A DNA stretch of 64,000 nucleotides from Macrostomum hystrix (Eukaryota > Animalia > Platyhelminthes): NCBI GenBank assembly GCA_950097015.1, contig CATNEN010000001.1, forward strand, positions 21,762,001 through 21,826,000, read 5' to 3'. Positions 3,237 through 22,902 of the stretch are shown here, piece after piece; the stretch's first letter is position 1, and each line of letters opens with the position of its first letter. A program made the translations under genes and the position numbers. The notes under the pieces are model-generated. The model saw nothing but the letters and a program-made list of their open reading frames with translations, was not told where the DNA came from and searched no databases.

Positions 3237-3389
3237 TCTCACCAATCCTTCATCCTTAATATTTTCAACTGAGAAATATTTAGGCAAAAATTGAATGACT
3301 ATATATAATTAAACTCAAGAAAATTTCTGCTTTTTAAGCACAGCCTCAGAGAAGGAAGGTATGCTCAGCCTCAGAGTGAGCATACTCAC

Positions 3390-4158
3390 CTGAGAACTTG
3401 TTCCCAATGCGCTCTAGCAGGATTTTTGTGTACAATCCGTCAGTGTTGTTCATCTTCAGATCCTCGGCTACCTGCGAGTCCAGCGTGGTCGCCTCAAAGT
3501 GGTAGGAGAAGTTGGACTTGAAGTAGTGCTGGAAGGCCCGGTCTACAAACTGGCACTGGAACATGTCCACGTAGTAGCTCGGACCCGAGTCGCTGGGCAC
3601 CGCTTTGCCCTTGTTGATGAAGAACAGTCGATTCCAGTTGCGGCCAAGGTTGGACATCACCCAGGTCAGCGCCTTATAGAGGCCCTGGCCAGTGGCGCCA
3701 ACTCTGATCATGTCGTCGTATCGTTTCAACGAGTCCGACAGTGCGCCCGCCGAGATGAAAGCGTCGCTGTCGTGCTTGTAGTACAGGAACACATTGTTGA
3801 TGGGGTAGGAGCAGAGAAGGCCGGTGATCAGGCGCAGCTGGTTGCTCTTTGCCGCGCTGTGCTGCTTGCACTTCAGCGACATCAGCTCGCGAACGGACAG
3901 CACGTGGTCGCAGGGAAAGTCCTCAGGCTCCGGCACCAGCTGAATGGTATCGCCCAGTGCTGTCAGCAGCAGGGGATGCTTCATAGCGACGTCAAACGCG
4001 GCCTGGACGAGCTCCAGCGGGCTGACAACCTCGTGATTCTCCGGCCCGTACTTTGGAGCCAGCAGCAACACGGTGACGTTCTTTTTCGGCGAAGCGATGG
4101 CGACGATTGACGAGACAGTCAGGAGGGCGAGGGAAATTCGCCATGGCAGGGCGATCAT
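3390..4158 (-). CDS. First coding exon (unit B) of an ANF-receptor / receptor guanylyl cyclase-type extracellular Venus-flytrap domain
   Basis: ATG at 4158, then a hydrophobic signal peptide (MIALPWRISLALLTVSSIVAIA). Family-typical elements: NVTVLLLAP, AAFDVAM, ITGLLCSY, FISAGA, MIRVG, NWNR. Ends at IGNKFS-G with a phase-1 donor CAG|gtgagt at 3389. No downstream exons recognised in the window. Confidence 0.75.
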
Positions 4159-4396
4159 GATTTGATCATAAACGAACGGAACTGTTTTCAATATCACTTC
4201 ATTGGATCGATGGAAATAGAAACTTTTTATCTTGCGTGTAAAGTTTGCGTATCGTTTTCTGAAGATTTCTTCTTCTCCTTCGTTCTTAGAGTTCTGTTCT
4301 TTGTTTTTTTATACTTCAGGCTAAAACAAATGTGCAGCTAGCTGCTTGAGAGGCAAGTGTTGTGCTTGTCTCTGTGTGTGCAATCACTAGAAGTGC

Positions 4397-4402
4397 TTTA
4401 TA
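4397..4402 (-). promoter_or_regulatory. TATA box (TATAAA) upstream of receptor unit B
   Basis: Minus strand reads GGTCTATAAAGCAC, about 240 bp upstream of ATG 4158. Confidence 0.45.
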
Positions 4403-4938
4403 GACCGGGGCGTTGGTAATATTGCGAGGCCGGGCCAGTTCTGGTTGGCTAATAGCAGAAGAACAGACAGAAGACAAGTCTGTTCAGTCTTGAATGACTG
4501 CATAAAATTTTGCAACCCCAGAAAAGCCACTGAGGGAGGGTTGGGGGCGGTTTGTGAGGAGGAAAATGTTTTTAGGCTGACGGGGTTTAAAAGGAGGCCG
4601 ATCTCTTGTCTGTTGCATTGTGGGACTGGGGAGGGGAAGGCTTATTGTACAAGGATAGATAAACGCATGGGAGAGATGAGAGAACTAAAAAGCTTCGTGG
4701 GAGAATCAATGCATATTCTCATGTCCTTTGACGATTGTTCGGATAATTTGGCTCAGATTAGTAACTAAGAGCGACTATAATTATAGAAATGATCAATAAG
4801 ATTAGGATTCGACTGTGCTCGGGCGTCTGAGTTATAGATTTTCATATCTGCACAAAAGATACGAGTACAAGGCAATCAAATAATATAAAGCATTAATCTT
4901 TAGAAAAATGACCCTGTCTTGAAAGGCGTTTTCTGGAG

Positions 4939-5330
4939 CCCGCAGCCAGCGACGAGGCAATTCTGCTCATTCCGCTGACTCCTGAGCACACACGCCACAC
5001 AGGTGTGTACATCTGCCCTGACTTTCTCATCTACAGGCAGTGTACACTCTCACTGCCTCTCAGAGGTTGGCCCTCAAGGGCGGGGGTCGGTGGCAGAGCG
5101 TTTCGATTCCGCGGAGAGGCCACATTTATTTGGGGCGCAGCCGCGGAGAGAAGGCTTGGGGGCTTGTCGTGCAAGACGATGAGAAAGTCAGGGCAGATGT
5201 ACACACCTGTGTGAGTGTGTGCTCAGGAGTCAGCGGAATGAGCAGAATTGCCTCGTCGCTGGCTGCGGGTCTAGTGTCACGAAATGATGCGCCATTGCAT
5301 GGAGACCTACCGCAGTTATTTATAATATTA
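4939..5330. mobile_element. Two divergent partial copies of tRNA-derived SINE family A forming an inverted repeat
   Basis: 4939-5081 matches the 10579-10933 copy (minus orientation). 5083-5330 is a plus-orientation, internally deleted copy starting GGGGTCGGTGGCAGAGCG...TTCGATTCC. Confidence 0.8.
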
Positions 5331-6562
5331 TTCCATTATTTTTTCCCTGTAGGGTGTGAATTAAACGACAACCCTATCAAATTTAGAAATTTTCACATTT
5401 TGAAACCAACAAAGCAGTTGAATTAAATAAATAGAATTATAAATTCCATATCTTCCTTGAAAATAATCAACCTGACAAAGGATAAATAAACAAAATATGG
5501 TAATTAAATCTGTGAAATATGGCACTAACGGGCATGACAAAGGATAATTTCTGCAATCGTTGACGACACAGCAGACACGCCAGCCACAACCCATTCACCG
5601 TTGTTGTGTTCTGTATAAATTAAAAAATTATGAAAAAGTAGACAATGACTCTGCGAGCTTAAAGGGTAGACAAACACAGTTGAGACCATACTCAACCATT
5701 GACTCCTGCCCTACAGCGCGTAACTCGTTTCGTTAATAAAAAAAGAGAGCTGACAGAAACCTCTTAGCTTCTTGAAGCTCTATGATAAAAAATGTTTGAG
5801 TCAGAGAGATGGGTTGATAATTTATTAGATGCTATAATCTTCACTGGTTTCGTATGAGTTTCGAATTCGAATTTCGAATAATTTATATTAACCGCAAAAA
5901 CGATTATAACAGCGTACTGAACGGCCTACTAACAAGCTCAACAGTAGGCAGAGAAGCTTTCATTCGGAATTTTTTGCTATTTCTCGAAAATTTTCTTAGA
6001 AACATTGCCTCAGAATCTTAGTCAAAGGGAAACGATTTGTATTTGTTCAAGCAAGGCCTTGTTTTAGTTAACCCAGGGTAGAAATTAATTTGGGCATTCA
6101 CAGTCCGCGGACTGAACAACTGTACATGGACTTTGGAAGCGAAGCATTGCTCAACAGCTGCGGCTGTGCAATTACTATAAATGCATCAACAGCTGAGCGA
6201 TAATCTATCTAGCCTACTCACAAGTAGAACGAATAGTAAGCAGTACCATTTTATAAGTAGTTAATCAGTTATCTGATTTTCGGCAAAGATTGTACATATA
6301 ACTAATCTAAGGCCACGGTGAGTTCATGTTTTTAATTAAATGAGTTCTTGTCACGTGAGTTTGGATCAATTTTCTGAGATCAAAGTAGTACACAAGAAGA
6401 TAGAAAACATGAATTACAAATATTTTTTTACCTATCAAAGGATTAGTTAGAGATACACTCACTAGAAAGAGATTTTTTCAGTTTCATTAAATTACTTGAA
6501 AACTATCAGATGCTTGATATCCCAAAAATGCTATCTAGGTTACATATGTTAGATAGAGAAGC

Positions 6563-6960
6563 AGCTGTTAGACAGGGCACCAGCTGTTAGATATAGTAAC
6601 AACTGTTAGACAGGGCACTAGCTCTTACACAAAGTGTTCAGCTGTTAGACAATGTGTTCAGGTGTTAGACAATGTATTCAGCTGTTAAACAACCTATTCA
6701 GCTGTTAGACAATGTGTTCAGCTGTTAAACAACCTATTCAGCTGTTAGACAATGTATTCAGCTGTTAAACAACCTATTCAGCTGTTAGACAATGTGTTCA
6801 GCTGTTAGACAACCTATTCAGCTGTTAGACAATGTGTTCAGCTGTTAGACAATGTGTTCAGCTGTTAGACAACCTATTCAGCTGTTAGACAATGTGTTCA
6901 GCTGTTAGACAACCTATTCAGCTGTTAGACAATGTGTTCAACTGTTAGACAATGTGTTCA
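6563..6960. repeat. 20-bp minisatellite (GCTGTTAGACAATGTGTTCA)n
   Basis: Tandem array beginning about 10 nt after the donor at 6972. Confidence 0.95.
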
Positions 6961-6972
6961 CAGCGGACTCAC

Positions 6973-7391
6973 AAGCCTTTCCAACTCCGACCCGTCGAGT
7001 GAGCACATCCTCCCAGCTCAGCGAGCCGGCCAGCTCGAAGATGCAGTCGATGCCGTACAGCTGGCCGGAGATCCTCGTGCACCACTGCATGAGGTTCTGA
7101 GCCAGGCCCTGCAGCCGTGGCAAATCATCAAACGGCGAGTGCTTGACTTCGCTGAACACGAAGGTGGCCCGTTTCCAGTTGTTCTCCTCCATGAAGATGC
7201 GGATGATGTCGGGCAGAACCTCCATGCGGAATGGCGTCACCCGGATCATGTTGGTGCCGTTTCGATTGCCGAATTCGTCCCTGACAGCAGCCGGTGTCAC
7301 CGACGGGATGCCGTTGAGAAACGTGAAGGGAATGAACTGCGTGATGGCGTAGTCAGTCATTGGGCCGAAGAAGGCGTGGATGCACAGCTTG
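6973..7391 (-). CDS. Second coding exon of ANF-receptor-type unit A
   Basis: Acceptor ccccgtag|C at 7392; its phase 2 matches the donor at 22325. Encodes KLCIHAFFGPMTDYAI..GIPSVTPAA..MIRVTP..ENNWKRATFVF. Ends at RRVGVGKA with a phase-1 donor T|gtgagt at 6972. Confidence 0.75.
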
Positions 7392-7477
7392 CTACGGGGT
7401 CGGCGAAATCGGGTTGGGGTGTGTACGAAGGTTATTTGATAATATCGCTTCAATTCGAGTCTAACTGGTGTCTTAGG

Positions 7478-8492
7478 GGTGTCAGTAGGTGGGTGTCAGA
7501 CTGAGTGGTGTCAGTATGAGGGGGTCAGACTGAGTGGTGTCAATAAGAGGGTGTCAGACTGAGTGGTGTCAATATGAGAGTGTCAGACTGAGTGGTGTCA
7601 ATAAGAGGGTGTCAGACTGAGTGGTGTCAATAAGAGGGTGTCAGACTGAGTGGTGTCAGTATGAGGGTGTCAGACTGAGTGGTGTCAATATGAGAGTGTC
7701 AGACTGAGTGGTGTCAATATGAGAGTGTCAGACTGAGTGGTGTCGGTATGAGGGTGTCAGACTGAGTGGTGTCAATATGAGGGTGTCAGTAAGAGGTTGT
7801 CAGTATGAGGGTGTCAGACTGAGTGGTGTCAGTAAGAGGGTGTCAGTAAGAGGGTGTCAGTAAGAGGGTGTCAGTAAGAGGTTGTCAGTATGAGGGTGTC
7901 AGTATGAGGGTGTCAGTATGAGGGTGTCAGACTGAGTGGTGTCAATAAGAGGGTGTCAGACTGAGTGGTGTCAATATGAGGGTGTCAGACTGAGTGGTGT
8001 CAATATGAGAGTGTCAGACTGAGTGGTGTCAGTATGAGGGTGTCAGACTGAGTGGTGTCAATATGAGGGTGTCAGACTGAGTGGTGTCAGTATGAGGGTG
8101 TCAGACTGAGTGGTGTCAGTATGAGGGTGTCAGTAAGAGGGTGTCAGTAAGAGGGTGTCAGTAAGAGGTTGTCAGTATGAGGGTGTCAGTATGAGGGTAT
8201 CAGTATGAGGGTGTCAGTATGAGGGTGTCAGACTGAGTGGTGTCAGTAAGAGGGTGTCAGTAAGAGGGTGTCAGTAAGAGGGTGTCAGTAAGAGGTTGTC
8301 AGTATGAGGGTGTCAGTATGAGGGTATCAGTATGAGGGTGTCAGTATGAGGGTGTCAGACTGAGTGGTGTCAGTAAGAGGGTGTCAGTATGAGGGTGTCA
8401 GAATGAGTGGTGTCAGTAGGTGGGTGTCAGACTGAGTGGTGTCAGTAAGAGGTTGTCAGACTGAGTGGTGTCAGCAGTTGGGTGTCAGAGGG
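7478..8492. repeat. 14/15-bp subunit (29-bp) minisatellite GTGTCAGACTGAGTG-GTGTCAGTATGAGG
   Basis: Directly visible tandem array. Confidence 0.95.
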
Positions 8493-8979
8493 TGTTTGAC
8501 ATAATAAAGTCTTCAAATAAAATATGGTTAAATCGGTTTTGTGTTTCCTTCAAACTTCAGCAATGCGAATAGCAAAAAAATAACTGTCTAACTATAGTTT
8601 AATTATATTCATTCCGATCTCGAAATATAAATCAAATAATCTAATAAATTATCTTTGCCAAAGCTACTCCTCATTTGTTGTACTGTCATCTCATGTTCTG
8701 AATTAACTCCAAGGCATTTATTCGAATGATCAATACAGCTTGTTGCCCAATGCAAAAATATCACGCAGTCTAGAATTAGCAAATGCACGACCCAATGCAC
8801 AATCTAATAGATAATAATATCTGTTTGTGTTATTTTTAGGAATTGATCAGTGAGAACAATATTTCTTAGTCTGTGCTTCCCTGTGAGTTACATCCCGATC
8901 ATGGCATATCAGGTATGCCATTGGAGAAATCTTAACATGACAACCACATAATAATTAATATGATGAGCTCCAAAGAGAA

Positions 8980-9480
8980 AATAATGATGACATGAAGGAC
9001 TGAGAATGATGACATGAAGGAATGAGAATGATGACATGAAGGAATGAGAATGATGAGATGAAGGACTGAGAATGATGACATGAAGGACTGAGAATGATGA
9101 CATGAAGGAATGAGAATGATGACATGAAGGAATGAGAATGATGAGATGAAGGACTGAGAATGATGACATGAAGCACTGAGAATGATAAGATGAAGGACTG
9201 AGAATGATGACATGAAGGGCTGAGAATGATGATGAGATGAAGGACTGAGAATGATGAGATGAAGGACTGAGAATGATGAGGTGAAGGGCTGAGAATGATG
9301 ATGAAATGTAGGACTGAGAATGATGATGAGATGAAGGACTGAGAATGATGATGAGATGAAGGACTGAGAATGATGATGAGATGAAGGACTGAGAATGATG
9401 ATGAGATGAAGGACTGAAAATGATAAGATGAAGGACTGAGAATGATGATGAGTTGAAGGACTGAGAATGATGACATGAGG
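8980..9480. repeat. 22-25-bp minisatellite (GAAGGACTGAGAATGATGACAT)n
   Basis: Directly visible; explains the overlapping low-complexity ORFs. Confidence 0.95.
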
Positions 9481-10578
9481 GAATAATATAAACTTAGAAA
9501 TTGCAGACAAAGGTATCTAAGTTTTAACTGCTAGCATTAAACTAGCAATAAGTTTTTGGGACGAATACTTTTGAATTTAGGGATTTACTGTTACCCTAAT
9601 GCGATCCTAAGTAATTTATTTGAAAGAGGATTTCCTATTACTAACCAGCAGTTATCCGCTAGTCATAAATGTCAAAAGTCACCCACCCTCTGTCTGTCTG
9701 TGTCTCATGAGACAGCTGTTCCGCCGAGAGCCGAGGCAAGCATGTCAAGAATCCCCAGGTCGATATTTAGGGGATTATAACTGGATGGGGATCCGAGGGG
9801 AAGTCACAGATGGGGGAGAGAGAGAGTGGACAGACAAAAGCCGCAATCTCACTGGGATTAAAGCTCAAGGATGGACTGAGGATAAAAGAATATGGAATGC
9901 CTACCTCAGGGGAATGTACATGGACATTGTCTTTCAATTCTAGCCGTAGCAGCAGCAGCAGCAAATCCAGTTCCTTTTGTTTTTCTTGTTTTCCATTCAA
10001 TTCTCAGTTATAGAATTTCTGATCAGTCTCTTCTACATTTGCAGTATCGAAAATGGGCAAATGTAACACAAACACATGCAACACGGCGGAGACAGGAGCA
10101 AGCGAAAGCATGATGTCACAGAAAAAAACAACTATCTGAGTACAGTCGCTGAGTACTTTGCGCCAAAGAAGACAGGGCGAGAGAAAAAAGAGGCAGATGA
10201 GAAAAAAGTATCACCATCTTTTGTCTGACGCGACTTTTTGTTCTTTGCCTCCATTGTTCTCGAGGCCATCAAAGTGTGGACACTTTTGCGTCATTCCGTT
10301 ATATCTGGCCAAGGAATTTGAGATTCCATTTAAATTTTCAACAGATTCTCTGTAACTAAGTGAATTTCGAGTTCACAGTTTCGTGCTATATATAATTATT
10401 CTCGTGAGCGTAATTCTAAATTCACGTCCTTCATTTTAATTTATCAATCTCAGCTTTTGCTGTTAATCAATCAATGCAAACCTATCAGTCACTACGTGCC
10501 AAATAATCAACTTATCTATAGCACCAAAAAATCTAAGTCTCGATTTTAAGCAATCAATCCCACTTATCAATCTCACAA

Positions 10579-10933
10579 TAATAATTTCAGGAGGGTTGCG
10601 GGCAATGGCATTTCAATTGGTGACACCAGACCCGCAACCAGCGAGGAGGCAATTCTGAACATTTCGCTGACTCCTGAGCACACACCCACACAGATACTGT
10701 ACGCAGGCACACACTCACACAGGTGTGTACATCTGCACTGACTTTTTCGTCGTCAGGGAGTGTACACTCTCACTGTGCCTTGGAGGTTGGCCCTCAAGGG
10801 CGTAAATTGCACGACAAGTCCCCAAGCCTTCTCTCCGCGGCTGCGCCCCAAATAAATATGGCCTCGCTGCGGAATCGAGCTCAGGGACCTTGGTGCGAGA
10901 GGAAAACGCGTTAACCGCTCTGCCACCGACCCT
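10579..10933 (-). mobile_element. tRNA-derived SINE, family A, full length
   Basis: Minus strand starts GGGTCGGTGGCAGAGCGG (A box)...GCTCGATTCC (B box) and ends in a short (ATT)n tail. TSD TTATCAA(T/A)CTCACAA at 10564-10578 and 10934-10948. Further copies at 43180-43538 and 4939-5330. Confidence 0.85.
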
Positions 10934-11790
10934 TTATCAAACTCACAACATAAATCTCCATATTTTTATTAAATATCCCTAATAGTCTCACCCTATCAAT
11001 ATATGTTTCTACTTATTAATTTCGTCATATCAATCTCGATGTCAATCTAATAAATCAATCCTACCTCATCAATCTCGAGTTTAGCTCAGCCAGCAGCAGC
11101 AAATCCTACCTGTCCGCTGACTAGCGGTATGCAAAGTTAAATTGCGCAAAATATAAAGCTAATTTCCCGATTTCGCTCTGCAGCCAATTCATTTGCACTT
11201 CCCGATTCAGATGAATTCGACCTTTGGCCAACACAAGCAGCCGGGCAGGGCTACTTCCCCCTTTAGGAATCGGTCAAGCGGGTTATAGATTCTACGACGT
11301 AGATGGGAAGTACGAGTATATTCTAGGCAATCAGTGGCTGCCGGGCCCCATTTTCTAGGCGGACAGAAAACATTGCCTAGACATGAATAATACATGCTAA
11401 TAATGTTTTCTAAGAAAGCTAATCTGGACTCACAGACACACACACTCACACACACTCACACACTCTCTGCCGTGCGTGTTTAGTTTATGTGTGTATCCAC
11501 GCAGCTACCAAGCGTGTTTTACTTCTCGCAAGATGTTGAGCAGTGTGCTGAGCTCAGTCGGGACCCGCAACCAGCTGTCTGCTTTCATTGTTTAAACAGG
11601 GAAAGCTTCTTTTCTTTGGTAGCTGCGGGCTTGTTTTTATAGTAGATTCGGTTCACGAGCTGTGACCAAAGTTTTAGGCACTTTTTCTTTCTAAAGTGCA
11701 AACACATTTCTGGCGCTATATCTAGATCAAAGTCACACAATGGCTCCTTTGTGCAATACTCTTCTTATCTTCTTCTTTTCTCGACATTTC

Positions 11791-12656
11791 TCACGTTATT
11801 TACCCATTGGTCACGTTATTTACCCATTGGTCACGTTATTTACTCATTGGTCACGTTATTTACCCATTGGTCACGTTATTTACCCATTGGTCACGTTATT
11901 TACTCATTGGTCACGTTATTTACCCATTGGTCACGTTATTTACCCATTGGTCACGTTATTTACCCATTGGTCACGTTATTTACCCATTGGTCACGTTATT
12001 TACCCATTGGTCACGTTATTTACCCATTGGTCACGTTATTTACCCATTGGTCACGTTATTTACTCATTGGTCACGTTATTTACCCATTGGTCACGTTATT
12101 TACCCATTGGTCCCGTTATTTACCCATTGGTCCCGTTATTTACCCATTGGTCACGTTATTTACCCATTGGTCACGTTATTTACCCATTGGTCCCGTTATT
12201 TACCCATTGGTCACGTTATTTACCCATTGGTCCCGTTATTTACCCATTGGTCCCGTTATTTACACATTGGTCCCGTTATTTACCCATTGGTCACGTTATT
12301 TACTCATTGGTCACGTTATTTACCCATTGGTCACGTTATTTACCCATTGGTCACGTTATTTACCCATTGGTCACGTTATTTACCCATTGGTCACGTTATT
12401 TACCCATTGGTCACGTTATTTACCCATTGGTCACGTTATTTACCCATTGGTCACGTTATTTACCCATTGGTCACGTTATTTACCCATTGGTCACGTTATT
12501 TACCCATTGGTCACGTTATTTACCCATTGGTCACGTTATTTACCCATTGGTCCCGTTATTTACCCATTGGTCACGTTATTTACCCATTGGTCACGTTATT
12601 TACCCATTGGTCACGTTATTTACCCATTGGTCACGTTATTTACTCATTGGTCACGT
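11791..12656. repeat. 20-bp minisatellite (TCACGTTATTTACCCATTGG)n, about 43 highly homogeneous copies
   Basis: Directly visible; followed by degenerate pyrimidine-rich repeats to about 13080. Confidence 0.98.
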
Positions 12657-13684: not shown

Positions 13685-16276
13685 GTGCAGAGGCGCAGGA
13701 ATTCTTCGAGTTCCTGTCGGAGCAGCTCGAGATGGTGGCGCATCGCGACACTGTGGTGATGCTTGGTGATCTCAACGCTGTAGCGCCGCGGTCCCAGCGC
13801 TGCCCGTTTGTGTCGCCACGCCAGAACGCCAACACCGCCGCGCTTGCGGACCTGATGGCGAGGCTCGACCTGGTGTCAGCCAACACGCGCTTCCGCAAAC
13901 CGCCCAACCGGCTGGCGACCTTCGCCGGCTGCAAGCGAAGGAGGCGGAACGCGCGAGGCCGATTCGCTACGACCCGCTTGGCGCAGCTCGACCACGTGCT
14001 GATTCGCCATCGCGAACGCAGCCGGCTGCAGAACTGCGACACAATGGAACCCCTGGCTGTCCGGTCCGACCATCGCCTGCTCTACTGCGACCTGAGGCTC
14101 TCTGATCCGCTGTACCGACCACCAAAACGCCCTAGAAGAAGGTACTTCCGCGCCTTGCAAGACCCAGGCACCCGCAGCAGGTTTGCGTACGCCTTCGCGA
14201 CCGCCCTGGGATCAGCGCAGGCGCCGGACTACAGCACAATTAGCTCAGCCATCGCCACTGCCGCTGCCAAGACTCTGCCGCTTATGGAACCCGCGTCACG
14301 GCAACTTCCAGTTTGGGCGAGCGACCCGGAGGTACGTGAGGCCCGCCGCACTGTCGAGCAGCTGCGGCGAGCCAGGCGACCGACATCCGATGCCGAGAAA
14401 GCCCTGGCAGACGCCTACGCAAGTCGACAGAAAGCCGCTGTTGACGACGCGATCCGGGCTGTCACCTCTGTCGGGCCTGAACGGCAGAACAGGGTCGTCT
14501 GGCCCGTTGTGAACGCCCTCACCGGTCGCAAAACGAAAGCGGCGCTCAACCTGGCTGGCGATACTGCCGAGGAGCGCAGAAACGAGCTGCGCACCTTCTT
14601 CGCCGCCATTGTCAACGCGCCGCCGCCGACTCTGCCGAACGAGATGCCGCTGCCCCCCGAGGTGGCGCTACCGCGGCAGGAGGACTTCGACACCAGTCCA
14701 GTGACCAGCACCGACATCGTGGAATTCGCCCGCAGGGCACCGGGAGGCCGCGCCCCCGGTCCGGATGAGGTCCCCGTAGAGGCACTGCGAGTCACAAGGG
14801 TTGCCACCGAGGTGGCCCGCGTGATGAACGGCGTCCTGGCGGGAGGCCCTGCGCCCCGCGAGTGGACCCAGGCCACCATCGTCGGCATCCCGAAGAAGCC
14901 GGGCACTACAAAGAAGGAGGAGCATCGCGGGATCTCGCTCATGTCCTGTGCCGCGAAGCTGTTCAACCGGGTGCTGTTAGCACGGTTACAGCCTGTGCTG
15001 GACTCGTTTCTGCGGTACGAGCAGAATGGGTTCCGGCCCCGTCGCGGCACGGTGACTCAGATCCTGGCCCTCCGTCGCATCATCGAGGAGGCGCGCATCC
15101 ACCAGTCAAGCCTTGTCGTCATCTTTGTTGACTTTCTCAAAGCTTTCGACTCGGTGGCCCGCGGCGCGCTGCCTCACGTGCTCCGTGCCTACAACATACC
15201 GCAGCAGCTGATCTCCGCCATCATGGCACTGTATCAGGACACCACCGCTGTGGTAGCGACGCCAGACGGACCGTCGGACCTGTTCAGCACTACCTCCGGA
15301 GTGCTGCAGGGTGACACCCTGGCGCCTTTTCTTTTCGTGCTGGTGATGGACTGGGTGCTCAGGACCGGCCTGCCGACTGCAGAGGACGGTTTTCTGCTTC
15401 AAAGACGCACTAGTCGACGGCACCCGGAGAAGAAGTTGTCTGTCCTCGGCTACGCGGACGACCTTGCCCTGCTGTCTACGACGGCCGAAGGCGCCCAACG
15501 GCTGCTGGATGGCCTGACTGCGGCGGCGGCGAGGGTCGGCCTCGCTATCAACGCCATGAAGACCGAGGTGCTGACGGTGCCGCAAAACCTACCTGCCGAG
15601 ATTCGACTAAGAGACGGTGACGGCCCCGGGACCGTGCTCCCGAAGTGCCGTCAGTTCGTCTACCTCGGCGGACTGGTGCCTGACGTGGGCGACGACCTGG
15701 CGAGACGACGCGGCAAGGCCTGGGCCGCCTACCGTTCTGTGCGGGCGGTGCTACTCTCCGAGGCCCTGTCGAACGGCGCCAGGTCCCAGCTTTTCCAGGC
15801 GGTTGTCGAGACCGCCCTCTTGTACAATGCTGAGACCTGGACGATGACCGGGGCGCTCGAGGCGCAGCTCGACGCGGCGCATGCGGCCCTAGTTCGCGCC
15901 GCTTTCGGCGCCCGCCGCAGCCCTGGCAGCGAGACAACCGAGTCCCTGTACCAGCGTGCGCGCCTAACGCGGCCTTCTGTCCTGCTGAGTCAGCGGCGAC
16001 TGCGGCTGGCCGGGCATGTCATCCGCGCGGAAACCTACTGCCCAGAGCCGCTGCAGGATGTCCTGCTGTGGACCTCGCAGGGACCGCGCAGGCGCGGCCA
16101 GGGACGTACAGCCCGCTATATTGACCGCCTTTTTGAAGACGCCCGAGCACCCAGCCAGGCGGCAGGCGTGAAGCACGTCAGAGACCTGGCACTGAAACGC
16201 GCGTTTTGACGCTCCCCCCTCTTGGCCACTTCTGTGGTCGGCGTGGAGTGTAACTATTATTATTATTATTATTATT
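13685..16276 (+). mobile_element. 5'-truncated RTE-like non-LTR retrotransposon
   Basis: Single GC-rich ORF, very short 3' UTR, (TAT)n tail at 16255-16276, and TSD-like ACACTGCTAT at 13675-13684 and 16277-16286. Confidence 0.9.
13732..16209 (+). CDS. LINE ORF: C-terminal part of APE endonuclease + reverse transcriptase
   Basis: APE motifs GDLNA, LDHVL, SDH. RT motifs APGPDEV, HRGISL, QNGFRP, DFLKAFDSV, GVLQGDTLAPFLF, YADD, YLG. RTE-type C-terminus LLYNAETW...RLRLAGHVIR. Confidence 0.95.
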   Translation: MVAHRDTVVMLGDLNAVAPRSQRCPFVSPRQNANTAALADLMARLDLVSANTRFRKPPNRLATFAGCKRRRRNARGRFATTRLAQLDHVLIRHRERSRLQNCDTMEPLAVRSDHRLLYCDLRLSDPLYRPPKRPRRRYFRALQDPGTRSRFAYAFATALGSAQAPDYSTISSAIATAAAKTLPLMEPASRQLPVWASDPEVREARRTVEQLRRARRPTSDAEKALADAYASRQKAAVDDAIRAVTSVGPERQNRVVWPVVNALTGRKTKAALNLAGDTAEERRNELRTFFAAIVNAPPPTLPNEMPLPPEVALPRQEDFDTSPVTSTDIVEFARRAPGGRAPGPDEVPVEALRVTRVATEVARVMNGVLAGGPAPREWTQATIVGIPKKPGTTKKEEHRGISLMSCAAKLFNRVLLARLQPVLDSFLRYEQNGFRPRRGTVTQILALRRIIEEARIHQSSLVVIFVDFLKAFDSVARGALPHVLRAYNIPQQLISAIMALYQDTTAVVATPDGPSDLFSTTSGVLQGDTLAPFLFVLVMDWVLRTGLPTAEDGFLLQRRTSRRHPEKKLSVLGYADDLALLSTTAEGAQRLLDGLTAAAARVGLAINAMKTEVLTVPQNLPAEIRLRDGDGPGTVLPKCRQFVYLGGLVPDVGDDLARRRGKAWAAYRSVRAVLLSEALSNGARSQLFQAVVETALLYNAETWTMTGALEAQLDAAHAALVRAAFGARRSPGSETTESLYQRARLTRPSVLLSQRRLRLAGHVIRAETYCPEPLQDVLLWTSQGPRRRGQGRTARYIDRLFEDARAPSQAAGVKHVRDLALKRAF

Positions 16277-17089
16277 ACACTGCTATACAATCTGTACACT
16301 GCTATACAACCTGTACACTGCTATACAATCTGTACACTGCTATACAATCTGTACACTGCTATACAATCTGTACACTGCTATACAATCTGTACACTGCTAT
16401 ACAATCTGTACACTGCTATACAATCTGTACACTGCTATACAATCTGTACACTGCTATACAATCTGTACACTGCTATACAACCTGTACACTGCTATACAAT
16501 CTGTACACTGCTATACAATCTGTACACTGCTAAACAATCTGTACACTGCTATACAATCTGTACACTGCTATACAACCTGTACACTGCTATACAATCTGTA
16601 CACTGCTATACAACCTGTACACTGCTATACAATCTGTACACTGCTATACAACCTGTACACTGCTATACAATCTGTGCACTGCTATACAACCTGTACACTG
16701 CTATACAATCTGTACACTGCTATACAATCTGTACACTGCTATACAACCTGTACACTGCTATACAATCTGTGCACTGCTATACAACCTGTACACTGCTATA
16801 CAATCTGTACACTGCTATACAATCTGTACACTGCTATACAACCTGTACACTGCTATACAACCTGTACACTGCTATACAATCTGTACACTGCTATACAATC
16901 TGTACACTGCTATACAACCTGTACACTGCTATACAATCTGTGCACTGCTATACAACCTGTACACTGCTATACAATCTGTACACTGCTATACAATCTGTAC
17001 ACTGCTATACAACCTGTACACTGCTATACAACCTGTACACTGCTATACAATCTGTACACTGCTATACAACCTGTACACTGCTATACAAT
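16277..17089. repeat. 19-bp minisatellite (ACACTGCTATACAATCTGT)n
   Basis: Directly visible; about two further units lie 5' of the LINE at 13648-13684. Confidence 0.97.
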
Positions 17090-17123
17090 CAGACAGACAG
17101 ACAGACAGACAGACAGAGTGACT

Positions 17124-17218
<95 letters not shown>

Positions 17219-17234
17219 TGACTGACTGACTGAC
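17090..17234. repeat. (AGAC)n / (TGAC)n microsatellite
   Basis: Directly visible. Confidence 0.97.
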
Positions 17235-18124
17235 AGGCAGAGAAAGATTAGGCAAATATCCTATACTAGGCATTCCATGTCTTCAGTGCTGCCAATCTAT
17301 CCCTACTCAACCCTCCTTCTGTCTTCCCATTCGACTCAGCAGCCCTTAGTTAGACTTATTTTTAAGTCTGCTCCACCCACTAATTTCCCTCATCGTCACT
17401 AAGATCCCCCTTGCTCCCTGCATCCCGCAGGAGTCCCAGAGTCATATTTATCCCCATCATCGCAACCCCATGGCAATCGCATAGGCATTTGCAATCTGGC
17501 CATTTGCCCAGCCCTCATTATTCTCGTCCTTTCGTTTTCGTCTTTGATACAATGTCGACAAGCGGAAATCCCCGACCTGTGGACAAGCCGGAGTTTGTTT
17601 TTCAATTTCTTGTTTAATATTTTCATCAGACATTTTTCTGAGTAGACCTGTTCGCCCATTAGGAATGACGTCACGCTTTGGTAATGTTGAGCAGCGAGGG
17701 AAATAGACTCCACTCTGAGAACAGAGGATCTGTTTGATTAACTGAGCAAGCAGCTCACAATTACACAATTACTCATTTCCCCACTAGTGAGACAGCTCTC
17801 TAAAATGGTATAGAGACTGCTGCTGCTCCTGCTGTTGCTTCTACCGAAGAATTTTCCTTGATTAAACCTCTAACGGCCCGTATACCACCTCACATGATCT
17901 CATCAAGTTACTTTCTGCACATCAGCATGTCTCCAGTGTCTTTCATTATTTGACCAAATATTTATAATCCCCAGTTTTCGAGCAATCGTACGACTGGTTG
18001 ATCCTATCAAATTCACTCATGTACACAGCGGGTCGGCTTTTAAGCTAAACTCTGTTTGAATTCCATTTGTATCTTCACCGCCTTCTCTTCTCATACTGTC
18101 ATTTCTCCACTACCTCTCCACAGT

Positions 18125-18825
18125 CACTTTCTTCCCCCCTCTCTCCCCTTTCTTCGCCTCTTTCCCCCTTTCTTCCCTCCTCTCTCCCCTTTCTTCTCCC
18201 CTTTCTTCCCTCTTCTCTCCCCTTTCTTCCCTCCTCTCTCTCCTTTCCTTCCCCTCTCTCCCCTTTCTCCCCCTCTCCCCTTTCTTTCACCTCTCTCCCC
18301 TTTCTTTCCCCTCTCTCCCCTTTCTTTCCCATCTCCCTTTTCCTTCCCCTCTCTCCCCTTTCTTCCCTCCTCTCTCTCCTTTCCTTCCCCTCTCTCCCCT
18401 TTCTTTCCCCTCTCTCCCCTTTCTTTCCCATCTCCCCTTTCCTTCCCCTCTCTCACCTTTCTTCCCTCCTCTCTCTACTTTCCTTCCCTTCTCTCCCCTT
18501 TCTCCCCTCTCTTCCCTTTCTCCCCTCTCTTCCATTTCTTCTCTCCTCTCTCTCCTTTCCTTCCCCTCTCTCCCCTTTCTCCCCTCTCTCCCCTTTCTTC
18601 CCTCCTCTCTCCCCTTTCTTCCCTCTTCTCTCTCCTTTCCTTCCCCTCTCTCCCCTTTCTTTCCCCTCTCTCCCCTTTCTCCCCCTCTATCCCCTTTCTT
18701 CCCTCCTCTCTCCCCTTTCTTTCCCCTCTCTCCCCTTTCTCCCCCCTCTATCCCCATTCTTCCACCGCTATCCTCTTCCTCCCTTCCTTTCTTCCTCTAA
18801 CCTCTTCCCCTCTCTCCTCTCTCAA
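18125..18825. repeat. Polypyrimidine (CT-rich) low-complexity tract
   Basis: Almost purine-free plus strand over about 700 bp. Confidence 0.95.
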
Positions 18826-19516
18826 TCTAATTCTCCCCTGTCTGTTACCCTCTCACCCTAATCCCTTTCCCTTTCCAACTTGAGAAATCGTTGAAAATAG
18901 CATTGGTAATCACCAGATCACGTTCGCCAACCACAAACTAGAAGAAAAAATCTGTTTCTTTTTCCCACAGAACCTTTTAACAGAAAATTAAAAACAAGAA
19001 ATTTTCCTTCATGCTTTCAGAGTTATAAGAAGCCTTACTTCCGCTAACAATACTGACAAAAACTTGTTAGAGAGATGAGAACAGATACACGCGGTACAGA
19101 GAATCAGACAGAAATAAGGTTCTTTTGCTGTCGCAACTTTTTCTAGCAACTCCCGAATCGACGATGCTCTGTCCTTACTGACATCACGGCATCCGTCAGC
19201 AACGGGGAAGTCTTTACACCCCATTACATTTCGGCTCTTCCTTGTGAATAGCCGAGGACCCTTCGGAAAACCTGCGGCAACAGCAGCGGTTGATTTTAAT
19301 TAGTTCTGCCCCAGTGTTTTCGTGACTAGAGCAGCACCCGTACTGCTCAGCAATATGGTGTGCTCAAATTCTTACTTAGATATAAATATCCCTCCCTATA
19401 TATATATATATAGACGTGTGCGACTGAAACACATTAATAGGTTCCTAAATATGCGCTATAGAATACTCTACGACTGGATAGATACTATTATATGCGCTAA
19501 ACACTAGGAATGCAAA

Positions 19517-20380
19517 GCGGACAGGTGGAATAGTGGACAGGTAGATCAATGGACAGGTAGATTAGTGGACAGGTAGATCAATGGACAGGTAGATTAGTGG
19601 ACAGGTAGATCAATGGACAGGTAGATTAGTTCACAGGTAAATCAGTGGACAGTTAGATCAATGGATAGGTAGATCAGTGTCTAAAAGTAGACAGGTGGAC
19701 AAGTAATTAGGTGGACAAGTAATTAGGTGGACAAGTAATTAGGTGGACAAGTAATTAGGTGGACAAGTAATTAGGTGGACAAGTAATTAGGTGGACAAGT
19801 AATTAGGTGGACAAGTAATTAGGTGGACAAGTAATTAGGTGGACAAGTAATTAGGTGGACAAGTAATTAAGTGGACAAGTAATTAGGTGGACAAGTAAAT
19901 AGGTGGACAAGTAATTAGGTGGACAAGTAATTAGGTGGACAAGTAATTAAGTGGACAAGTAAATAGGTGGACAAGTAATTAGGTGGACAAGTAAATAGGT
20001 GGACAAGTAATTAAGTGGGCAAGTAATTAGGTGGACAAGTAATTAGGTGGACAAGTAATTAGGTGGACAAGTAATTAGGTGGACAAGTAATTAGGTGGAC
20101 AAGTAATTAAGTGGACAAGTAATTAGGTGGACAATTAATTAGGTGGACAAGTAATTAGGTGGACAAGTAATTAGGTGGACAAGTAATTAGGTGGACGAGT
20201 AATTAGGTGGACAAGTAATTAGGTGGACGAGTAATTAGGTGGACAAGTCATTAAGTGGACAAGTAGACAGGTGGACAGACTCGACAGGTGGACAGACTCG
20301 ACAGGTGGACAGACTCGACAGGTGGACAGAGTAGACAAGTGGACAATTTGACAGGTGGACAAGTGGACAGGTGGACAAAT
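19517..20380. repeat. 16-bp minisatellite (GGTGGACAAGTAATTA)n with related flanking units
   Basis: Directly visible. Confidence 0.95.
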
Positions 20381-21224
20381 TCAGATGCAGATAAGAAACA
20401 AAAGTACAAAAAAGTACAAAACGGTAGCCAGCGATTCAGTTAATATAAATCAGTTTATAATTTAAACGGGCATCAATTTAAACAGCCAAACTGTAAAAGT
20501 CTCAAGTAAAATGGCTATCAATCAGGGAAGCTACTAATTAATAATTGTCTAACCGAACGGTATCAGCCTAAGCCATATGCGTAGCACAAGCCGCTCTGGT
20601 ATTACACTGCTCAGAGCATCGCATGAAAACAAGCGCGGGATTGCTATAAGTTTTTAGCCAGCAAGGCCAACAGGAATACAAGAAGGCTAGTTAGGCTCGA
20701 GAAATCAATGCAATCTCCCTAACTCCCCAGAGGATAATTAGTTTGACGGTGGGGCGCAGTTTTCAAAAGAAGATTCCATGTCCCGAAATCTCATCAGGAA
20801 GATCAGACAGACAGTCAGAGGAGGAAGCGATCGATCTTTCAGACAAAAACTGGAGATTGGGGCAGTCAGGACAAGATGGTAAAAATGTAGGGAAAATATG
20901 GAGACTAGCCGGCAGAGCATCGTGGTTGCGAACGGGTCACCCATATAGATGACATCGGCTTGATGTAAGCCATTTTCTTATCTGAACTGTTGGGTTCAAC
21001 AGTTTTTCTGTTTGAAATGGGAGATGCCGCACTGCGCTGCGCAATGTCTTTTCGATCGCTGTGCCGGAAAAAAGAACTATTGATTTTGGAGCTTAGATTT
21101 CCTTTCTCCGATGCCCCTCAAGGCTATGCAAAGCTGAATTCGAAATAAGCGAAACAATTTTCACGGAGCCAAACGACATCACTTGCTTGCTGAGAGAGAA
21201 TACTGAAAAGTGCAAACAGGGGCT

Positions 21225-22257
21225 GAGATAAGGATTGGATAAGGGTGAGATAAGAATTGGAGAAGGGTGAGATAAGGATTGGAGAAGGGTGAGATAAGGA
21301 TTGGAGAAGGGTGAGATAAGGATTGGAGAAGGGTGAGATAACGATTGGAGAAGAGTGAGATAAGGGTTGGAGAAGGGTGAGATAAAGGTTGGATAAGGGT
21401 GGGTTAAGGGTTAGATAAGGGTGAGATAAGGATTGGAGAAGGGTGAGATAAGGGTTGGAGAAGGGTGAGATAAGGGTTGGAGAAGGGTGAGATAAGAATT
21501 GGAAAAGGGTGAGATAAAATTGGAGAAGGGTGAGATAAGGATTGGAGAAGAGTGAGATAAGGGTTGGAGAACAGTGAGATAAGGATTGGATAAGGGTGAG
21601 ATAAGAATTGGAGAAGGGTGAGATAAGGGTTGGAGAAGGGTGAGATAAGGGTTGGATAAGGGTGAGATAAGGGTTGGAGAACAGTGAGATAAGGGTTGGA
21701 TAAGGGTGAGTTTAGGATTGGAAAAGGGTGAGATAAGGGTTGGAAAAGGGTGAGATAAGAATAGGAGAAGGGTGAGATAAGGATTGGAGAAGAGTGAGAT
21801 AAGGGTTGGAGAAGGGTGAGATAAGAATTGGAGAAGGATGAAATAAGGGTTGGGTAAGGGTGAGTTTAGGATTGGAAAAGGGTGAGATAAGGGTTGGATA
21901 AGGGTGAGATAAGGGTTGGATAAGGGTGAGTTAAGGATTGGATAAGGGTGAGTTAAGGATTGGATAAGGGTGAGATAAGGATTGGAGAAGTGTGAGATAA
22001 GGGTTGGAAAAGGGTGAGATAAGGGTTGGATAAGGGTGAGATAAGGGTTGGAAAAGGGTGAGATAAGGGTTGGATAAGGGTGAGATAAGGGTTGGATAAG
22101 GGTGAGATAAGGGTTGGAAAAGGGTGAGATAAGGGTTGGATAAGGGTGAGATAAGGGTTGGATAAGGGTGAGATAAGGATTGGATAAGGGTGAGATAAGG
22201 GTTGGATAAGGGTGAGATAAGGGTTGGAAAAGGGTGAGATAAGGGTTGGATAAGGGT
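21225..22257. repeat. 22-bp G-rich minisatellite (GGGTGAGATAAGGGTTGGATAA)n
   Basis: Directly visible; starts about 70 nt into the first intron of receptor unit A. Confidence 0.95.
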
Positions 22258-22325
22258 TCGCGAAATCTAGCTCTAGCGTTATCAGTTAAAACTATAGAGT
22301 TTAAATGACTAATTGAAGCACTTAC

Positions 22326-22702
22326 CCCACTGACAGCTGATAGAAGTACGGGTTCATGTGATAGTTCAGGTAGTAAGGATCCACAGTAGACATGCCGGCA
22401 ATGCCATTGTGCAGTCGAGGGTTCTTCTCAACAGTCTGGAACCATTTGATGTCCTCGAAAAGCACCTCCTTGGTGACGCTACTGAGCAGCGAGTGAAAGC
22501 GGCTGTTGCTCTGCACCTCATCCCAGGCCAAGTCGAACACTGTGGCGAGTGTCGGCGCATTCAGGTAATAGGCCGTCGACCTGGGCGCAACCAGGTAGAC
22601 TCTGAGATGCCTGGTGCAATTATAATTCACTACCGCTTGGCTGCGTTGCCATGGAAACAGCAACGCGGCCGTTAATAGTAGCAAAATATTGCTGCGTCTC
22701 AT
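22326..22702 (-). CDS. First coding exon of ANF-receptor-type unit A
   Basis: ATG at 22702, signal peptide MRRSNILLLLTAALLFPWQRSQA, then LRVYLVAP and ATVFDLAW (parallel to VTVLLLAP and AAFDVAM of unit B). Donor GG|gtaag at 22325 (phase 2) joins exon 7391-6973 in frame across a 15-kb intron. Confidence 0.65.
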
Positions 22703-22788: not shown

Positions 22789-22902
22789 TTATATGGAGAA
22801 AAAGGTGTGAAATCCCAGAATCCCAGGTTCAGAACAGCTATAAGTGTGCCGGGTTGTTGGGGAATCAAGAACTTCCCTACTCAGGAACTCTGATCTGATT
22901 GG
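22789..22902 (-). promoter_or_regulatory. TATA-like (CATATAAG) and CCAAT (AGCCAATCAG) elements upstream of receptor unit A
   Basis: Minus-strand motifs about 90 and 195 bp upstream of ATG 22702. Confidence 0.35.

What the first reader, a model, noticed from the sequence alone, without database searches (positions are those of the whole stretch)
3390..22702. Candidate 'variable N-terminus / shared constant region' receptor locus (protocadherin/UGT1-like logic in an ANF-receptor / guanylyl cyclase-type gene)
Seen: two very divergent but homologous N-termini on the same strand, unit A (22702-22326 spliced to 7391-6973) and unit B (4158-3390). Each has its own ATG, signal peptide and TATA-like element. 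Both stop at the equivalent position (EDVLTRRVGVGKA| versus KILLERIGNKFS|) on a phase-1 gtgagt donor. The 2.8 kb between unit A's donor and unit B's start holds only a minisatellite, SINEs and AT-rich DNA, with no recognisable rest of the ectodomain, TM, kinase-homology or cyclase exons; none is evident in 1-3389 either. Known: in receptor guanylyl cyclases this helix is followed by a hydrophobic V-I-I-L-C-type strand. Inference: A must skip over B, so both may be alternative-promoter 5' modules spliced to one constant exon set beyond the left edge, giving different ligand-binding lobes on one signalling body. The split codons (G.. in B, T.. in A) would both be hydrophobic (Val versus Phe/Leu) if the shared exon starts with T.
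Basis: partly seen in the sequence, partly recalled or inferred. Interest (0 to 1): 0.85.

Follow-up and report, generated by a model that had tools for sequence, protein, structure and literature searches.

The report
Receptor gene with four swappable fronts
A flatworm hormone-receptor-type guanylyl cyclase gene carries four very different alternative front pieces for its ligand-binding domain (two of them in this window) ahead of one shared signalling body, so one gene probably makes several receptors; public gene models show the same layout in molluscs and a ribbon worm, but I found no paper that describes it.

Summary
Units A (22702-22326 + 7391-6973) and B (4158-3390) are intact minus-strand N-terminal modules. 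Each has its own ATG and hydrophobic leader and ends on a phase-1 GT donor.

The predicted shared exon set exists, with its first exon (K1) 33.7 kb left of B's donor. K1 has a phase-1 acceptor and starts with TC, giving Phe (A) or Val (B) before VVLCADPD. After it come the rest of the ANF domain, the TM segment, the kinase-homology domain and the cyclase. Two more modules (C, D) lie between B and K1, so there are four N-termini and one constant set. Two paralogous loci keep the same order; a third keeps A (decayed) and D.

RNA-like contigs from four runs cover only the exons and leave B exactly at 3390. Transcript-derived proteins of related flatworms join B-type modules directly to K1. A's join to K1 is inferred, not seen.

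RefSeq isoforms in molluscs and a nemertean have the same design, and C. elegans gcy-28.c/.d is a described relative. This scan had already found the same gene from the neighbouring window (s1-849033) and a four-cassette paralog (s1-306090). Verdict: real, a new variant of a known kind.

The parts
22326..22702 (-). Module A, exon 1: ATG, hydrophobic leader and the start of the ANF N-terminal lobe. It ends in phase 2 (GG|gtaagt).
   Evidence: Conserved with its ATG, leader and a phase-2 GG|gt donor in the paralogs on C38, C8 and C12.
6973..7391 (-). Module A, exon 2: ANF_receptor positions about 52-128 and onward. It ends in phase 1 (T|gtgagt).
   Evidence: RNA-like contigs cover 7053-7392, and one carries 70 extra letters beyond the acceptor. 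The phase-1 T|gt donor is conserved on C38 and C8.
3390..4158 (-). Module B: a single coding exon with ATG, leader and the whole N-terminal half of the ANF domain. It ends in phase 1 (G|gtgagt).
   Evidence: In all four runs the contigs end their fit exactly at 3390 and run on for 29 letters that are unlike the genome. Orthologous B-type modules are joined to K1 in P0001, P0165 and P0166.
4159..4362 (-). 5' untranslated part of module B's transcript, with its likely transcription start region.
   Evidence: Contigs of four runs run colinear with the genome from inside B to 4348, 4348, 4357 and 4362 and stop there without extra letters (records 4, 12, 20, 27). This fits a transcript start and not a splice, but contigs cannot prove a start.
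4363..6972 (.). Spacer that module A's transcript must skip. It holds no exon, a foldback-type dispersed repeat (4941-5411) and a 20-nt minisatellite (6620-6960).
7392..22325 (-). Intron of module A (14.9 kb). It is full of minisatellites and holds a non-LTR retrotransposon ORF on the opposite strand (13732-16209, +).
   Evidence: The 825-aa ORF looks like the reverse-transcriptase protein of a non-LTR retrotransposon by eye; no domain search was run on it.
1..3389 (-). Start of the 33.7-kb intron from B's donor to the first constant exon K1 (C1:21731620-21731731, window -30269 to -30380). It holds a 35-nt minisatellite at 1442-3256. Left of the window lie module C (L011:6359-6733 and L011:3181-3534), module D (L011:111-401 and L010:7584-8003) and the constant exons K1 to K10 (L009 and L008).

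Best explanation
Units A and B are the two upstream members of an array of four alternative 5' modules (A, B, C, D) of one receptor guanylyl cyclase gene. The gene belongs to the NPR1 / gcy-28 / Gyc32E-like group, lies on the minus strand and spans about 66 kb.

Each module has its own start codon and signal peptide. Each codes the N-terminal half or so (about 230 mature residues) of the ANF-type hormone-binding domain. Each ends in phase 1.

A transcript that starts at a given module is spliced from that module's donor straight to the first constant exon K1. It skips every module downstream, because those modules offer no conserved in-frame acceptor. K1 and the following exons supply the second half of the binding domain, the transmembrane helix, the kinase-homology domain, the dimerisation helix and the cyclase.

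The result is up to four receptors with different ligand-binding surfaces on one signalling body.

Shown:
- the anatomy and the matching phases;
- the single constant set;
- expression and exact donor use of B;
- direct B-to-K1 joins in transcripts of relatives;
- an intact NPR-type fold for a B+K protein.

Inferred:
- the direct A-to-K1 join;
- separate promoters (partly supported for B);
- different ligand specificity.
For: Anatomy
- there are four N-terminal modules and one set of ANF-C-terminal, TM, kinase and cyclase exons in 114 kb. No fifth module was found.
- the K1 acceptor is ...catccag|TC GTG GTC CTC TGC, in phase 1.
- the split codons give Phe (A), Val (B), Val (C) and Ile (D) here, and Phe, Val, Val and Leu in the paralogs on C38 and C8.
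- all four modules keep their ATG, leader, open frame and phased donors in the C38 and C8 paralogs. Each module is only 33-59% identical to its counterpart in those loci, while the constant exons are 54-94% identical across the loci.
- Pfam places C1, D1, D2 and A2 at ANF positions 2-128 and K2 at 216-352. The kinase and cyclase follow.

RNA
- contigs of four runs cover only the exons. Their fit ends exactly at 3390 and they carry 29 more letters.
- That 29 is the number expected for k=31 unitigs if B-to-K1 and C-to-K1 transcripts coexist. An unspliced K1 intron boundary predicts 27, and a join into C's first exon predicts 26. This is my inference.
- There is no cover in 4470-6981 outside a repeat, and the B contigs stop near 4350 without overhang.

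Relatives
- P0001 comes from a 1677-nt Logan contig, which is too short to hold any intron. It reads B-type ...ERIGNKLS|VVVLCADPD... and continues through K2.
- in Macrostomum lignano, the ortholog of this gene exists as a B-type model (P0166) and a D-type model (P0170). Their constant parts are 98% identical.
- Likewise P0165 (B-type) and P0171 (D-type) share a 100% identical constant part.

Fold
- the AlphaFold model of P0001 has mean pLDDT 86.9. It matches the NPR-A and NPR-C ectodomains over 465 alignment columns (TM 0.75/0.86). The exon junction sits at the start of a strand.
Against: - The A2 donor-to-K1 junction was not seen. The listed contig pieces over A2 reach only down to 7053, and no public model I retrieved joins an A-type module directly to K1.
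- The 29 loose letters at 3390 were not printed, so in this genome the partner of B's donor is inferred.
- The four runs belong to one study and are not on record as RNA.
- Two M. lignano models chain modules in series: P0002 (B to C exon 1 without its leader) and P0008 (A to part of D). On this locus a phase-1 AG does exist in C exon 1, at the leader cleavage site.
- On C12 the A exon 2 has lost its donor, so modules can decay.
- Promoters were not mapped.
Confidence: 0.8

Rival explanations
1. Unit A (or A and B) is transcribed but not joined to the constant exons. It would be a decaying duplicate or a stand-alone secreted half-domain whose transcript ends in the downstream intron.
For: - The A2-to-K1 junction was not observed, and the listed contig pieces over A2 are short and few.
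- The A module of the C12 paralog has lost its exon-2 donor.
- Reading through B's donor meets a stop after 14 codons.
Against: - A keeps its ATG, leader, open frame, the phase-2 internal intron and the phase-1 T|gt donor in three paralogs, at only 40-46% identity. That would not be expected of a dead exon.
- B's contigs leave the genome exactly at the donor.
- Half of a two-lobed binding domain is unlikely to fold alone.
- B-type modules are joined to K1 in relatives.
Confidence: 0.1
2. The modules are spliced in series. This would give one long ectodomain with several tandem N-lobes, as in some automatic gene models, rather than being alternatives.
For: - M. lignano models P0002 (B followed by C exon 1 without its leader) and P0008 (A followed by part of D) chain modules, as does the amphioxus model P0004 (three N-lobe modules in a row).
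- A phase-1 AG with a pyrimidine tract lies in C exon 1 of this locus.
Against: - B has no in-frame phase-1 AG in its first 60 codons here or on C8.
- The candidate AGs in the other first exons sit at different places in each paralog.
- Every module carries its own ATG and leader.
- The contigs over B run unbroken into its own 5' UTR.
- P0001, P0165 and P0166 join B directly to K1.
- P0002 also reads through C's donor, and P0008 cuts exons at odd places, which is what one expects of predictor artefacts.
- A join into C exon 1 predicts a 26-letter overhang, not 29.
Confidence: 0.06
3. The architecture is the same but the choice mechanism differs. One upstream promoter makes a long primary transcript, and the modules are chosen by splicing or by spliced-leader trans-splicing rather than by separate promoters.
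For: - No promoter was mapped.
- From my own knowledge, macrostomid flatworms use spliced-leader trans-splicing.
- Contigs cannot show true 5' ends.
Against: - B's contigs end at 4348-4362 in four runs with no foreign letters. A shared spliced leader would leave a short overhang there.
- There is no contig cover between A2 and B.
- In C. elegans, gcy-28.c and gcy-28.d have separate promoters with different expression (PMC9249223, PMC3842693).
- CCAAT-type motifs lie 120-290 nt upstream of several module ATGs, including A's, but the enrichment is weak.
Confidence: 0.12

Closest known systems
C. elegans gcy-28 isoforms (gcy-28.c and gcy-28.d)
   Same: - It is a receptor guanylyl cyclase of the same subfamily; nematode relatives appear among the hits to the constant part.
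- The isoforms use different start codons, as the different forward primers show.
- They share one 3' end.
- They have separate promoters with different expression: broad for .c and AIA neurons for .d (PMC9249223, PMC3842693).
   Different: - I could not read how much of the ectodomain differs between the worm isoforms, because the primary papers are not held.
- Only two promoter-specific forms are discussed in the papers I read.
- No paper treats it as a variable-constant array.
- Here there are four modules. Each replaces about half of the ligand-binding domain, and the layout is repeated in three to four paralogous genes.
Clustered protocadherin alpha/gamma and UGT1A loci (also chelicerate sDscam)
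   Same: - There is a tandem array of variable 5' units, each with its own start codon and leader.
- Each unit is spliced directly to one shared set of constant exons.
- The downstream variable units are skipped because they lack a usable acceptor.
   Different: - Three of the four modules here are split by an internal intron, at different places (phase 2 in A and C, phase 1 in D, none in B).
- The cut falls inside one folded domain, not between domains.
- The array is small (four modules).
- Nothing is known about stochastic choice, insulators or promoter elements.
RefSeq isoform sets of 'atrial natriuretic peptide receptor 1-like' genes in molluscs and a nemertean
   Same: - The junction is the same: an N-terminal part of 223-266 residues followed by a constant part that starts at the (V/I)(V/I)(V/I)LCA strand.
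- The constant parts are 100% identical and the N-terminal parts are 21-38% identical. This holds in Mercenaria (4 forms), Mytilus, Argopecten, Haliotis, Biomphalaria, oysters and Lineus.
   Different: - These are automatic models that no paper I could find describes.
- The mollusc module types form cross-species clades, and a single clade of the four Mercenaria modules is rejected (p-AU 1.7e-47).
- Whether the flatworm types A-D are orthologous to them is open: a single flatworm clade is not rejected (p 0.36).
Vertebrate NPR-A / NPR-C hormone-binding domains (PDB 1dp4, 1t34, 1jdn, 1yk0)
   Same: - The B+K protein P0001 is predicted to adopt this two-lobed fold over its whole length.
- It matches NPR-C by sequence from module residue 117 onward.
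   Different: From my own knowledge, vertebrate genes code the domain with one fixed N-terminus. Ligands of the flatworm forms are unknown.

Membership tests
Receptor (membrane) guanylyl cyclase, NPR/gcy-28-like | Extracellular ANF_receptor (type I periplasmic-binding-protein) domain | tested here: met
   - K2 matches ANF positions 216-352 (E 3.6e-22).
- Modules A2, C1, D1 and D2 match weakly at positions 2-128.
- The P0001 model matches the NPR-A/C ectodomains with TM 0.75/0.86.
Receptor (membrane) guanylyl cyclase, NPR/gcy-28-like | Single transmembrane helix, then a kinase-homology domain | tested here: met
   - The open frame at L009:6238-7053 holds a hydrophobic stretch followed by a PK_Tyr_Ser-Thr match (E 4e-10).
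- The next exon continues the kinase match (translation).
Receptor (membrane) guanylyl cyclase, NPR/gcy-28-like | C-terminal class III cyclase catalytic domain | tested here: met
   Guanylate_cyc is matched in three exons (E 2.6e-5, 2.6e-25 and 1.8e-22). I did not inspect the catalytic residues.
Variable-constant gene cluster (protocadherin / UGT1A logic) | Tandem variable 5' units, each with its own start codon and leader, in one orientation upstream of the constant exons | tested here: met
   There are four modules: A and B in the window, C and D to its left. All are on the minus strand. The leader is judged from hydrophobicity only.
Variable-constant gene cluster (protocadherin / UGT1A logic) | One constant exon set shared by all variable units | tested here: met
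   There is a single set of K exons within 114 kb, and the numbers are 4 to 1.
Variable-constant gene cluster (protocadherin / UGT1A logic) | Each variable unit is spliced directly to the first constant exon, skipping the downstream units | tested here: inconclusive
   - The phases all match.
- B leaves the genome at its donor.
- B-type modules are joined directly to K1 in relatives' transcripts and models.
- The junction letters in this genome were not seen for B, and there is no junction evidence for A.
Variable-constant gene cluster (protocadherin / UGT1A logic) | A promoter of its own in front of each variable unit | tested here: inconclusive
   - B's contigs stop at 4348-4362 without overhang in four runs.
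- Nothing comparable is available for A.
- The CCAAT motifs are only weakly enriched.

The most novel reading that the evidence does not exclude
The array of modules is an old and general device of this receptor subfamily. It would be present in the lophotrochozoan ancestor and perhaps earlier, with gcy-28 in nematodes and gene models that begin exactly at the constant strand in hemichordates. Each module type would confer a different peptide-ligand specificity and be chosen cell type by cell type through its own promoter. With dimerisation, four modules in each of three to four paralogs would then give a combinatorial hormone-receptor code from a handful of genes.
Probability: 0.3. Interest if true: 0.8.

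Novelty: new variant of a known kind. Interest (0 to 1): 0.62.

Why it matters
Receptor guanylyl cyclases are usually thought of as one gene, one ligand-binding domain. Here half of the binding domain is exchangeable by choice of the 5' module.

This explains how an animal can widen its repertoire of peptide or hormone receptors without duplicating the 40-kb signalling body.

It also explains a class of annotation errors for these loci: chained, truncated or 'isoform X' models in flatworms, molluscs and amphioxus.

It offers a tractable test. Macrostomum is transgenic-ready, so module-specific reporters and knock-downs, and cGMP assays of each isoform against peptide libraries, could deorphanise four receptors at once.

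It further suggests re-reading C. elegans gcy-28.c/.d as a remnant of the same design.

Tried and rejected
**Searches that gave little or nothing**
- Pfam on A exon 1 and on B gave nothing.
- A word-index search with the second half of B (131 aa) found nothing. The length filter hides longer proteins, so this says little.
- In the profile search with three B modules, P0003 and P0005 are low-complexity repeat proteins, not relatives.
- Searches for papers on alternative first exons or variable-constant layouts of guanylyl cyclases found nothing relevant.
- The two primary gcy-28 papers are not held.

I could not fetch the DNA of P0001's contig.
- Read laying printed only the best-supported loose ends, all of them in the repeat.
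- No run on record as RNA was found. The four runs are treated as RNA because their contigs cover the exons only.
I redid the step from coordinates only.

- I gave no joined (spliced) model to any search or folding tool. Exons were searched one by one by reference, and natural database proteins (P0001, P0165 and others) stood in for joined forms. In the tree, A, C and D are represented by their second exons only.

**Ideas that did not hold**
- A shared promoter motif: the 9-mer count was inflated by double counting and does not exceed the controls. The CCAAT enrichment is modest.
- Orthology of flatworm module types with mollusc types: not resolved.
- Separate genes each with their own constant exons: rejected.

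Full report
**What is in the window**

On the minus strand, unit A exon 1 runs from 22702 to 22326. It has an ATG and a hydrophobic leader, and it codes 125 codons plus GG before donor gtaagt. Exon 2 runs from 7391 to 6973. Its acceptor is cccgtag|C, and it ends ...RRVGVGKA plus T before donor gtgagt. Unit B is one exon, 4158 to 3390. It has an ATG and leader, codes 256 codons, and ends ...ERIGNKFS plus G before donor gtgagt.

Pfam alone sees only A exon 2 (ANF_receptor 52-128, E 0.0014) and nothing in B.

**Where the rest of the gene is**

The window is C1:21762001-21826000 of a 220-Mb genome. Whole-genome scans with Guanylate_cyc and ANF_receptor place ANF positions 180-352 on the same strand at C1:21729762-21731732. 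They place three cyclase exons at C1:21718878-21720169. These lie 33 to 46 kb left of B's donor.

I fetched the 50 kb left of the window and the three paralogous loci, then compared them by translated search after masking tandem repeats. Colinear conserved blocks on C1 are, in order:
- A1, A2 and B;
- a module C of two exons (L011:6359-6733 and L011:3181-3534);
- a module D of two exons (L011:111-401 and L010:7584-8003);
- the constant exons K1 to K10.

Open frames and Pfam show what the constant exons code:
- K1 and K2 code the second half of the ANF domain (K2: positions 216-352, E 3.6e-22).
- The next exon codes a transmembrane stretch and the start of a kinase-homology domain.
- The last exons code the cyclase.

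C and D each start with an ATG and a hydrophobic leader. HMMs built from each exon type find no fifth module anywhere in the 114 kb, including 22703-64000. So there are four N-termini and one constant set.

**Splice logic**

K1's acceptor reads ...cctcatccag|TC GTG GTC CTC TGC GCT GAC, in phase 1. All four modules end in phase 1. The split codons are T|TC Phe (A), G|TC Val (B), G|TC Val (C) and A|TC Ile (D), each followed by VVLCADPDTVREIM.

Internal introns differ between modules. A and C have one in phase 2 at different places, D has one in phase 1 before the GPxC motif, and B has none.

B has no in-frame phase-1 AG in its first 60 codons, so A cannot be read into B. Candidate AGs in the other first exons are not conserved in position among the paralogs.

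**Conservation**

The loci on C38 and C8 keep A, B, C, D and K in the same order. Each module there keeps its ATG, leader, open frame and phased donor. K1 starts TT in those loci, giving Phe, Val, Val and Leu. The locus on C12 keeps A and D, but its A exon 2 has lost the donor.

Each module is only 33-59% identical to its counterpart in the C38 and C8 loci, while the constant exons are 54-94% identical across the loci. The modules have therefore been kept as working units through the gene duplications.

Homology among the four types is weak but consistent and colinear:
- hhalign gives P 1e-5 to 8e-4 for cognate pairs (B-D2, A2-D2, A2-C2, A2-B, A1-C1, B-D1) and 0.15-0.8 for non-cognate pairs.
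- hmmsearch cross-hits occur only at cognate exons.
- The A2, B and D2 HMMs hit the same stretch of NPR-type receptors of molluscs, arthropods and fish.

**RNA evidence in this organism**

No run on record as RNA holds the B exon. Four runs of one study hold 70-97% of its words, in contig sets of about 47 Mb. Laid on window:2900-7600, their contigs cover only 3390 to about 4360 and parts of 7053-7392, plus a very deep dispersed repeat at 4941-5411. That pattern is RNA-like.

In every run a contig ends its fit exactly at 3390 and carries 29 further letters (records 2, 11, 18, 25). B's donor is therefore used.

Contigs over B's ATG run unbroken to 4348-4362 and stop without extra letters. This fits a transcript start of B's own and argues against a splice from A into B.

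One contig fits 7259-7392 and carries 70 more letters. This fits the A1-A2 splice.

An inference of mine concerns the number 29. Logan contigs come from k=31 unitigs, which break where the next word is shared with another context.
- B ends ...CAG and C ends ...CGG, so coexisting B-to-K1 and C-to-K1 transcripts predict a 29-letter overhang.
- An unspliced K1 boundary (...CCAG) predicts 27.
- A join into C exon 1 predicts 26.
- Sharing K1 only with A or D predicts 30.

The observed 29 in all four runs fits the first case.

**Evidence from relatives**

A profile of the three B modules, searched against 1.8 billion representatives, gave two strong hits.

P0001 (489 aa) comes from a Logan contig of 1677 nt. 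That is too short to hold any intron, so it derives from RNA. It reads a B-type module (73% identical to ours) followed directly by ...ERIGNKLS|VVVLCADPDTVREIM... and continues through K2.

The closest named relatives are Macrostomum lignano proteins, so the genome is a macrostomid flatworm but not M. lignano itself (64-86% identity). In M. lignano:
- The ortholog of this gene exists as P0166 (a B-type module plus the full constant part, 1172 aa) and as P0170 (a D-type module on a 98% identical constant part).
- The C38 ortholog exists as P0165 (B-type) and P0171 (D-type), with 100% identical constant parts.

Two other M. lignano models chain modules: P0002 (B then C exon 1 without its leader, then read-through of C's donor) and P0008 (A then part of D). 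I take these for predictor artefacts but list the serial reading as a rival.

**Fold**

An AlphaFold model of P0001 with 48 aligned sequences has mean pLDDT 86.9 and pTM 0.86, and a strand begins at the exon junction. Foldseek's best matches are the NPR-A and NPR-C hormone-binding domains, over 435-466 alignment columns (TM 0.71-0.77 by query length and 0.85-0.90 by target length). By sequence, NPR-C aligns from module residue 117 onward. A B-type module plus K1 and K2 thus makes one complete two-lobed binding domain. The module supplies roughly its first half.

**How general it is**

Many mollusc, scorpion and hemichordate models begin exactly at, or just inside, the K1 strand.

A search with the constant part of a Haliotis protein lists RefSeq isoform sets. 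Within a species the constant parts are 100% identical and the 223-266 residues before them are 21-38% identical. This holds for four forms in Mercenaria, three in Mytilus edulis and Argopecten, and two in Haliotis, Biomphalaria, Mya, oysters and the nemertean Lineus.

In a tree of modules, the mollusc types form cross-species clades. Holding the four Mercenaria modules together is rejected (p-AU 1.7e-47; I named that group after seeing the tree). Holding all flatworm modules together is not rejected (p 0.36). Whether A-D are orthologs of the mollusc types therefore stays open.

**Literature**

I found no paper on a variable-constant receptor guanylyl cyclase.

The nearest described case is C. 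elegans gcy-28. Isoforms .c and .d are cloned with different forward primers and one reverse primer. They have separate promoters, and they are expressed broadly versus in AIA neurons (PMC9249223, PMC3842693). The primary papers are not held.

**Earlier notes of this scan**

The scan had already noted the same gene from the neighbouring window (two cassettes plus a third beyond, s1-849033), their different intron positions (s1-849158) and a four-cassette paralog (s1-306090). I re-derived these points here from the sequence. This report adds modules A and B of this gene, the count of four, and the RNA and ortholog evidence.

**Limits**

- The A-to-K1 join, the promoters and any difference in ligand are inferred.
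- No joined exon model was given to any search or folding tool.

**Verdict**

The feature is real. It is visible in public gene models, but I found it described in no paper.

Noticed in passing
window 4941-5411: A dispersed repeat whose first 142 bases are the reverse complement of bases 235-374, so it is foldback or MITE-like. The first look found over 3000 candidate copies in the genome. The RNA-like contigs cover it at very high depth.
   Followed up: partly
window 13732-16209 (+): An 825-aa open frame that by eye looks like the reverse-transcriptase protein of a non-LTR retrotransposon. It lies antisense inside module A's intron. No domain search was run.
   Followed up: no
window 1442-3256, 6620-6960, 7478-7600, 11740-12900, 16220-17230, 23425-24800: Long minisatellites (35-nt and 20-nt units and others) fill the introns and sit directly against the donors of A2 and B. 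About 31% of the 114-kb region is tandem repeat.
   Followed up: partly
L025:7038-7298 (C12:3492038-3492298): In the C12 paralog, exon 2 of the A-type module stops early and has no phase-1 donor. That gene seems to have lost module A, and it has no B or C.
   Followed up: partly
window about 22895-22910, and upstream of other module ATGs in L015, L016, L018, L020-L022: CCAAT-box-like motifs (consensus core GCCAATCAG) lie 120-290 nt upstream of several module start codons. I counted 8 sites where about 1.6 are expected, but a k-mer control does not single them out.
   Followed up: partly
protein P0004 (Branchiostoma lanceolatum 'NPR3', CAH1254748.1): This amphioxus gene model holds three N-lobe modules in a row and no constant part. 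That looks like a chained array of alternative modules in a chordate.
   Followed up: no
L009:6238-7053 (C1:21728238-21729053): The juxtamembrane region of the constant part carries a Gln/His-rich low-complexity insert between the transmembrane helix and the kinase-homology domain.
   Followed up: no
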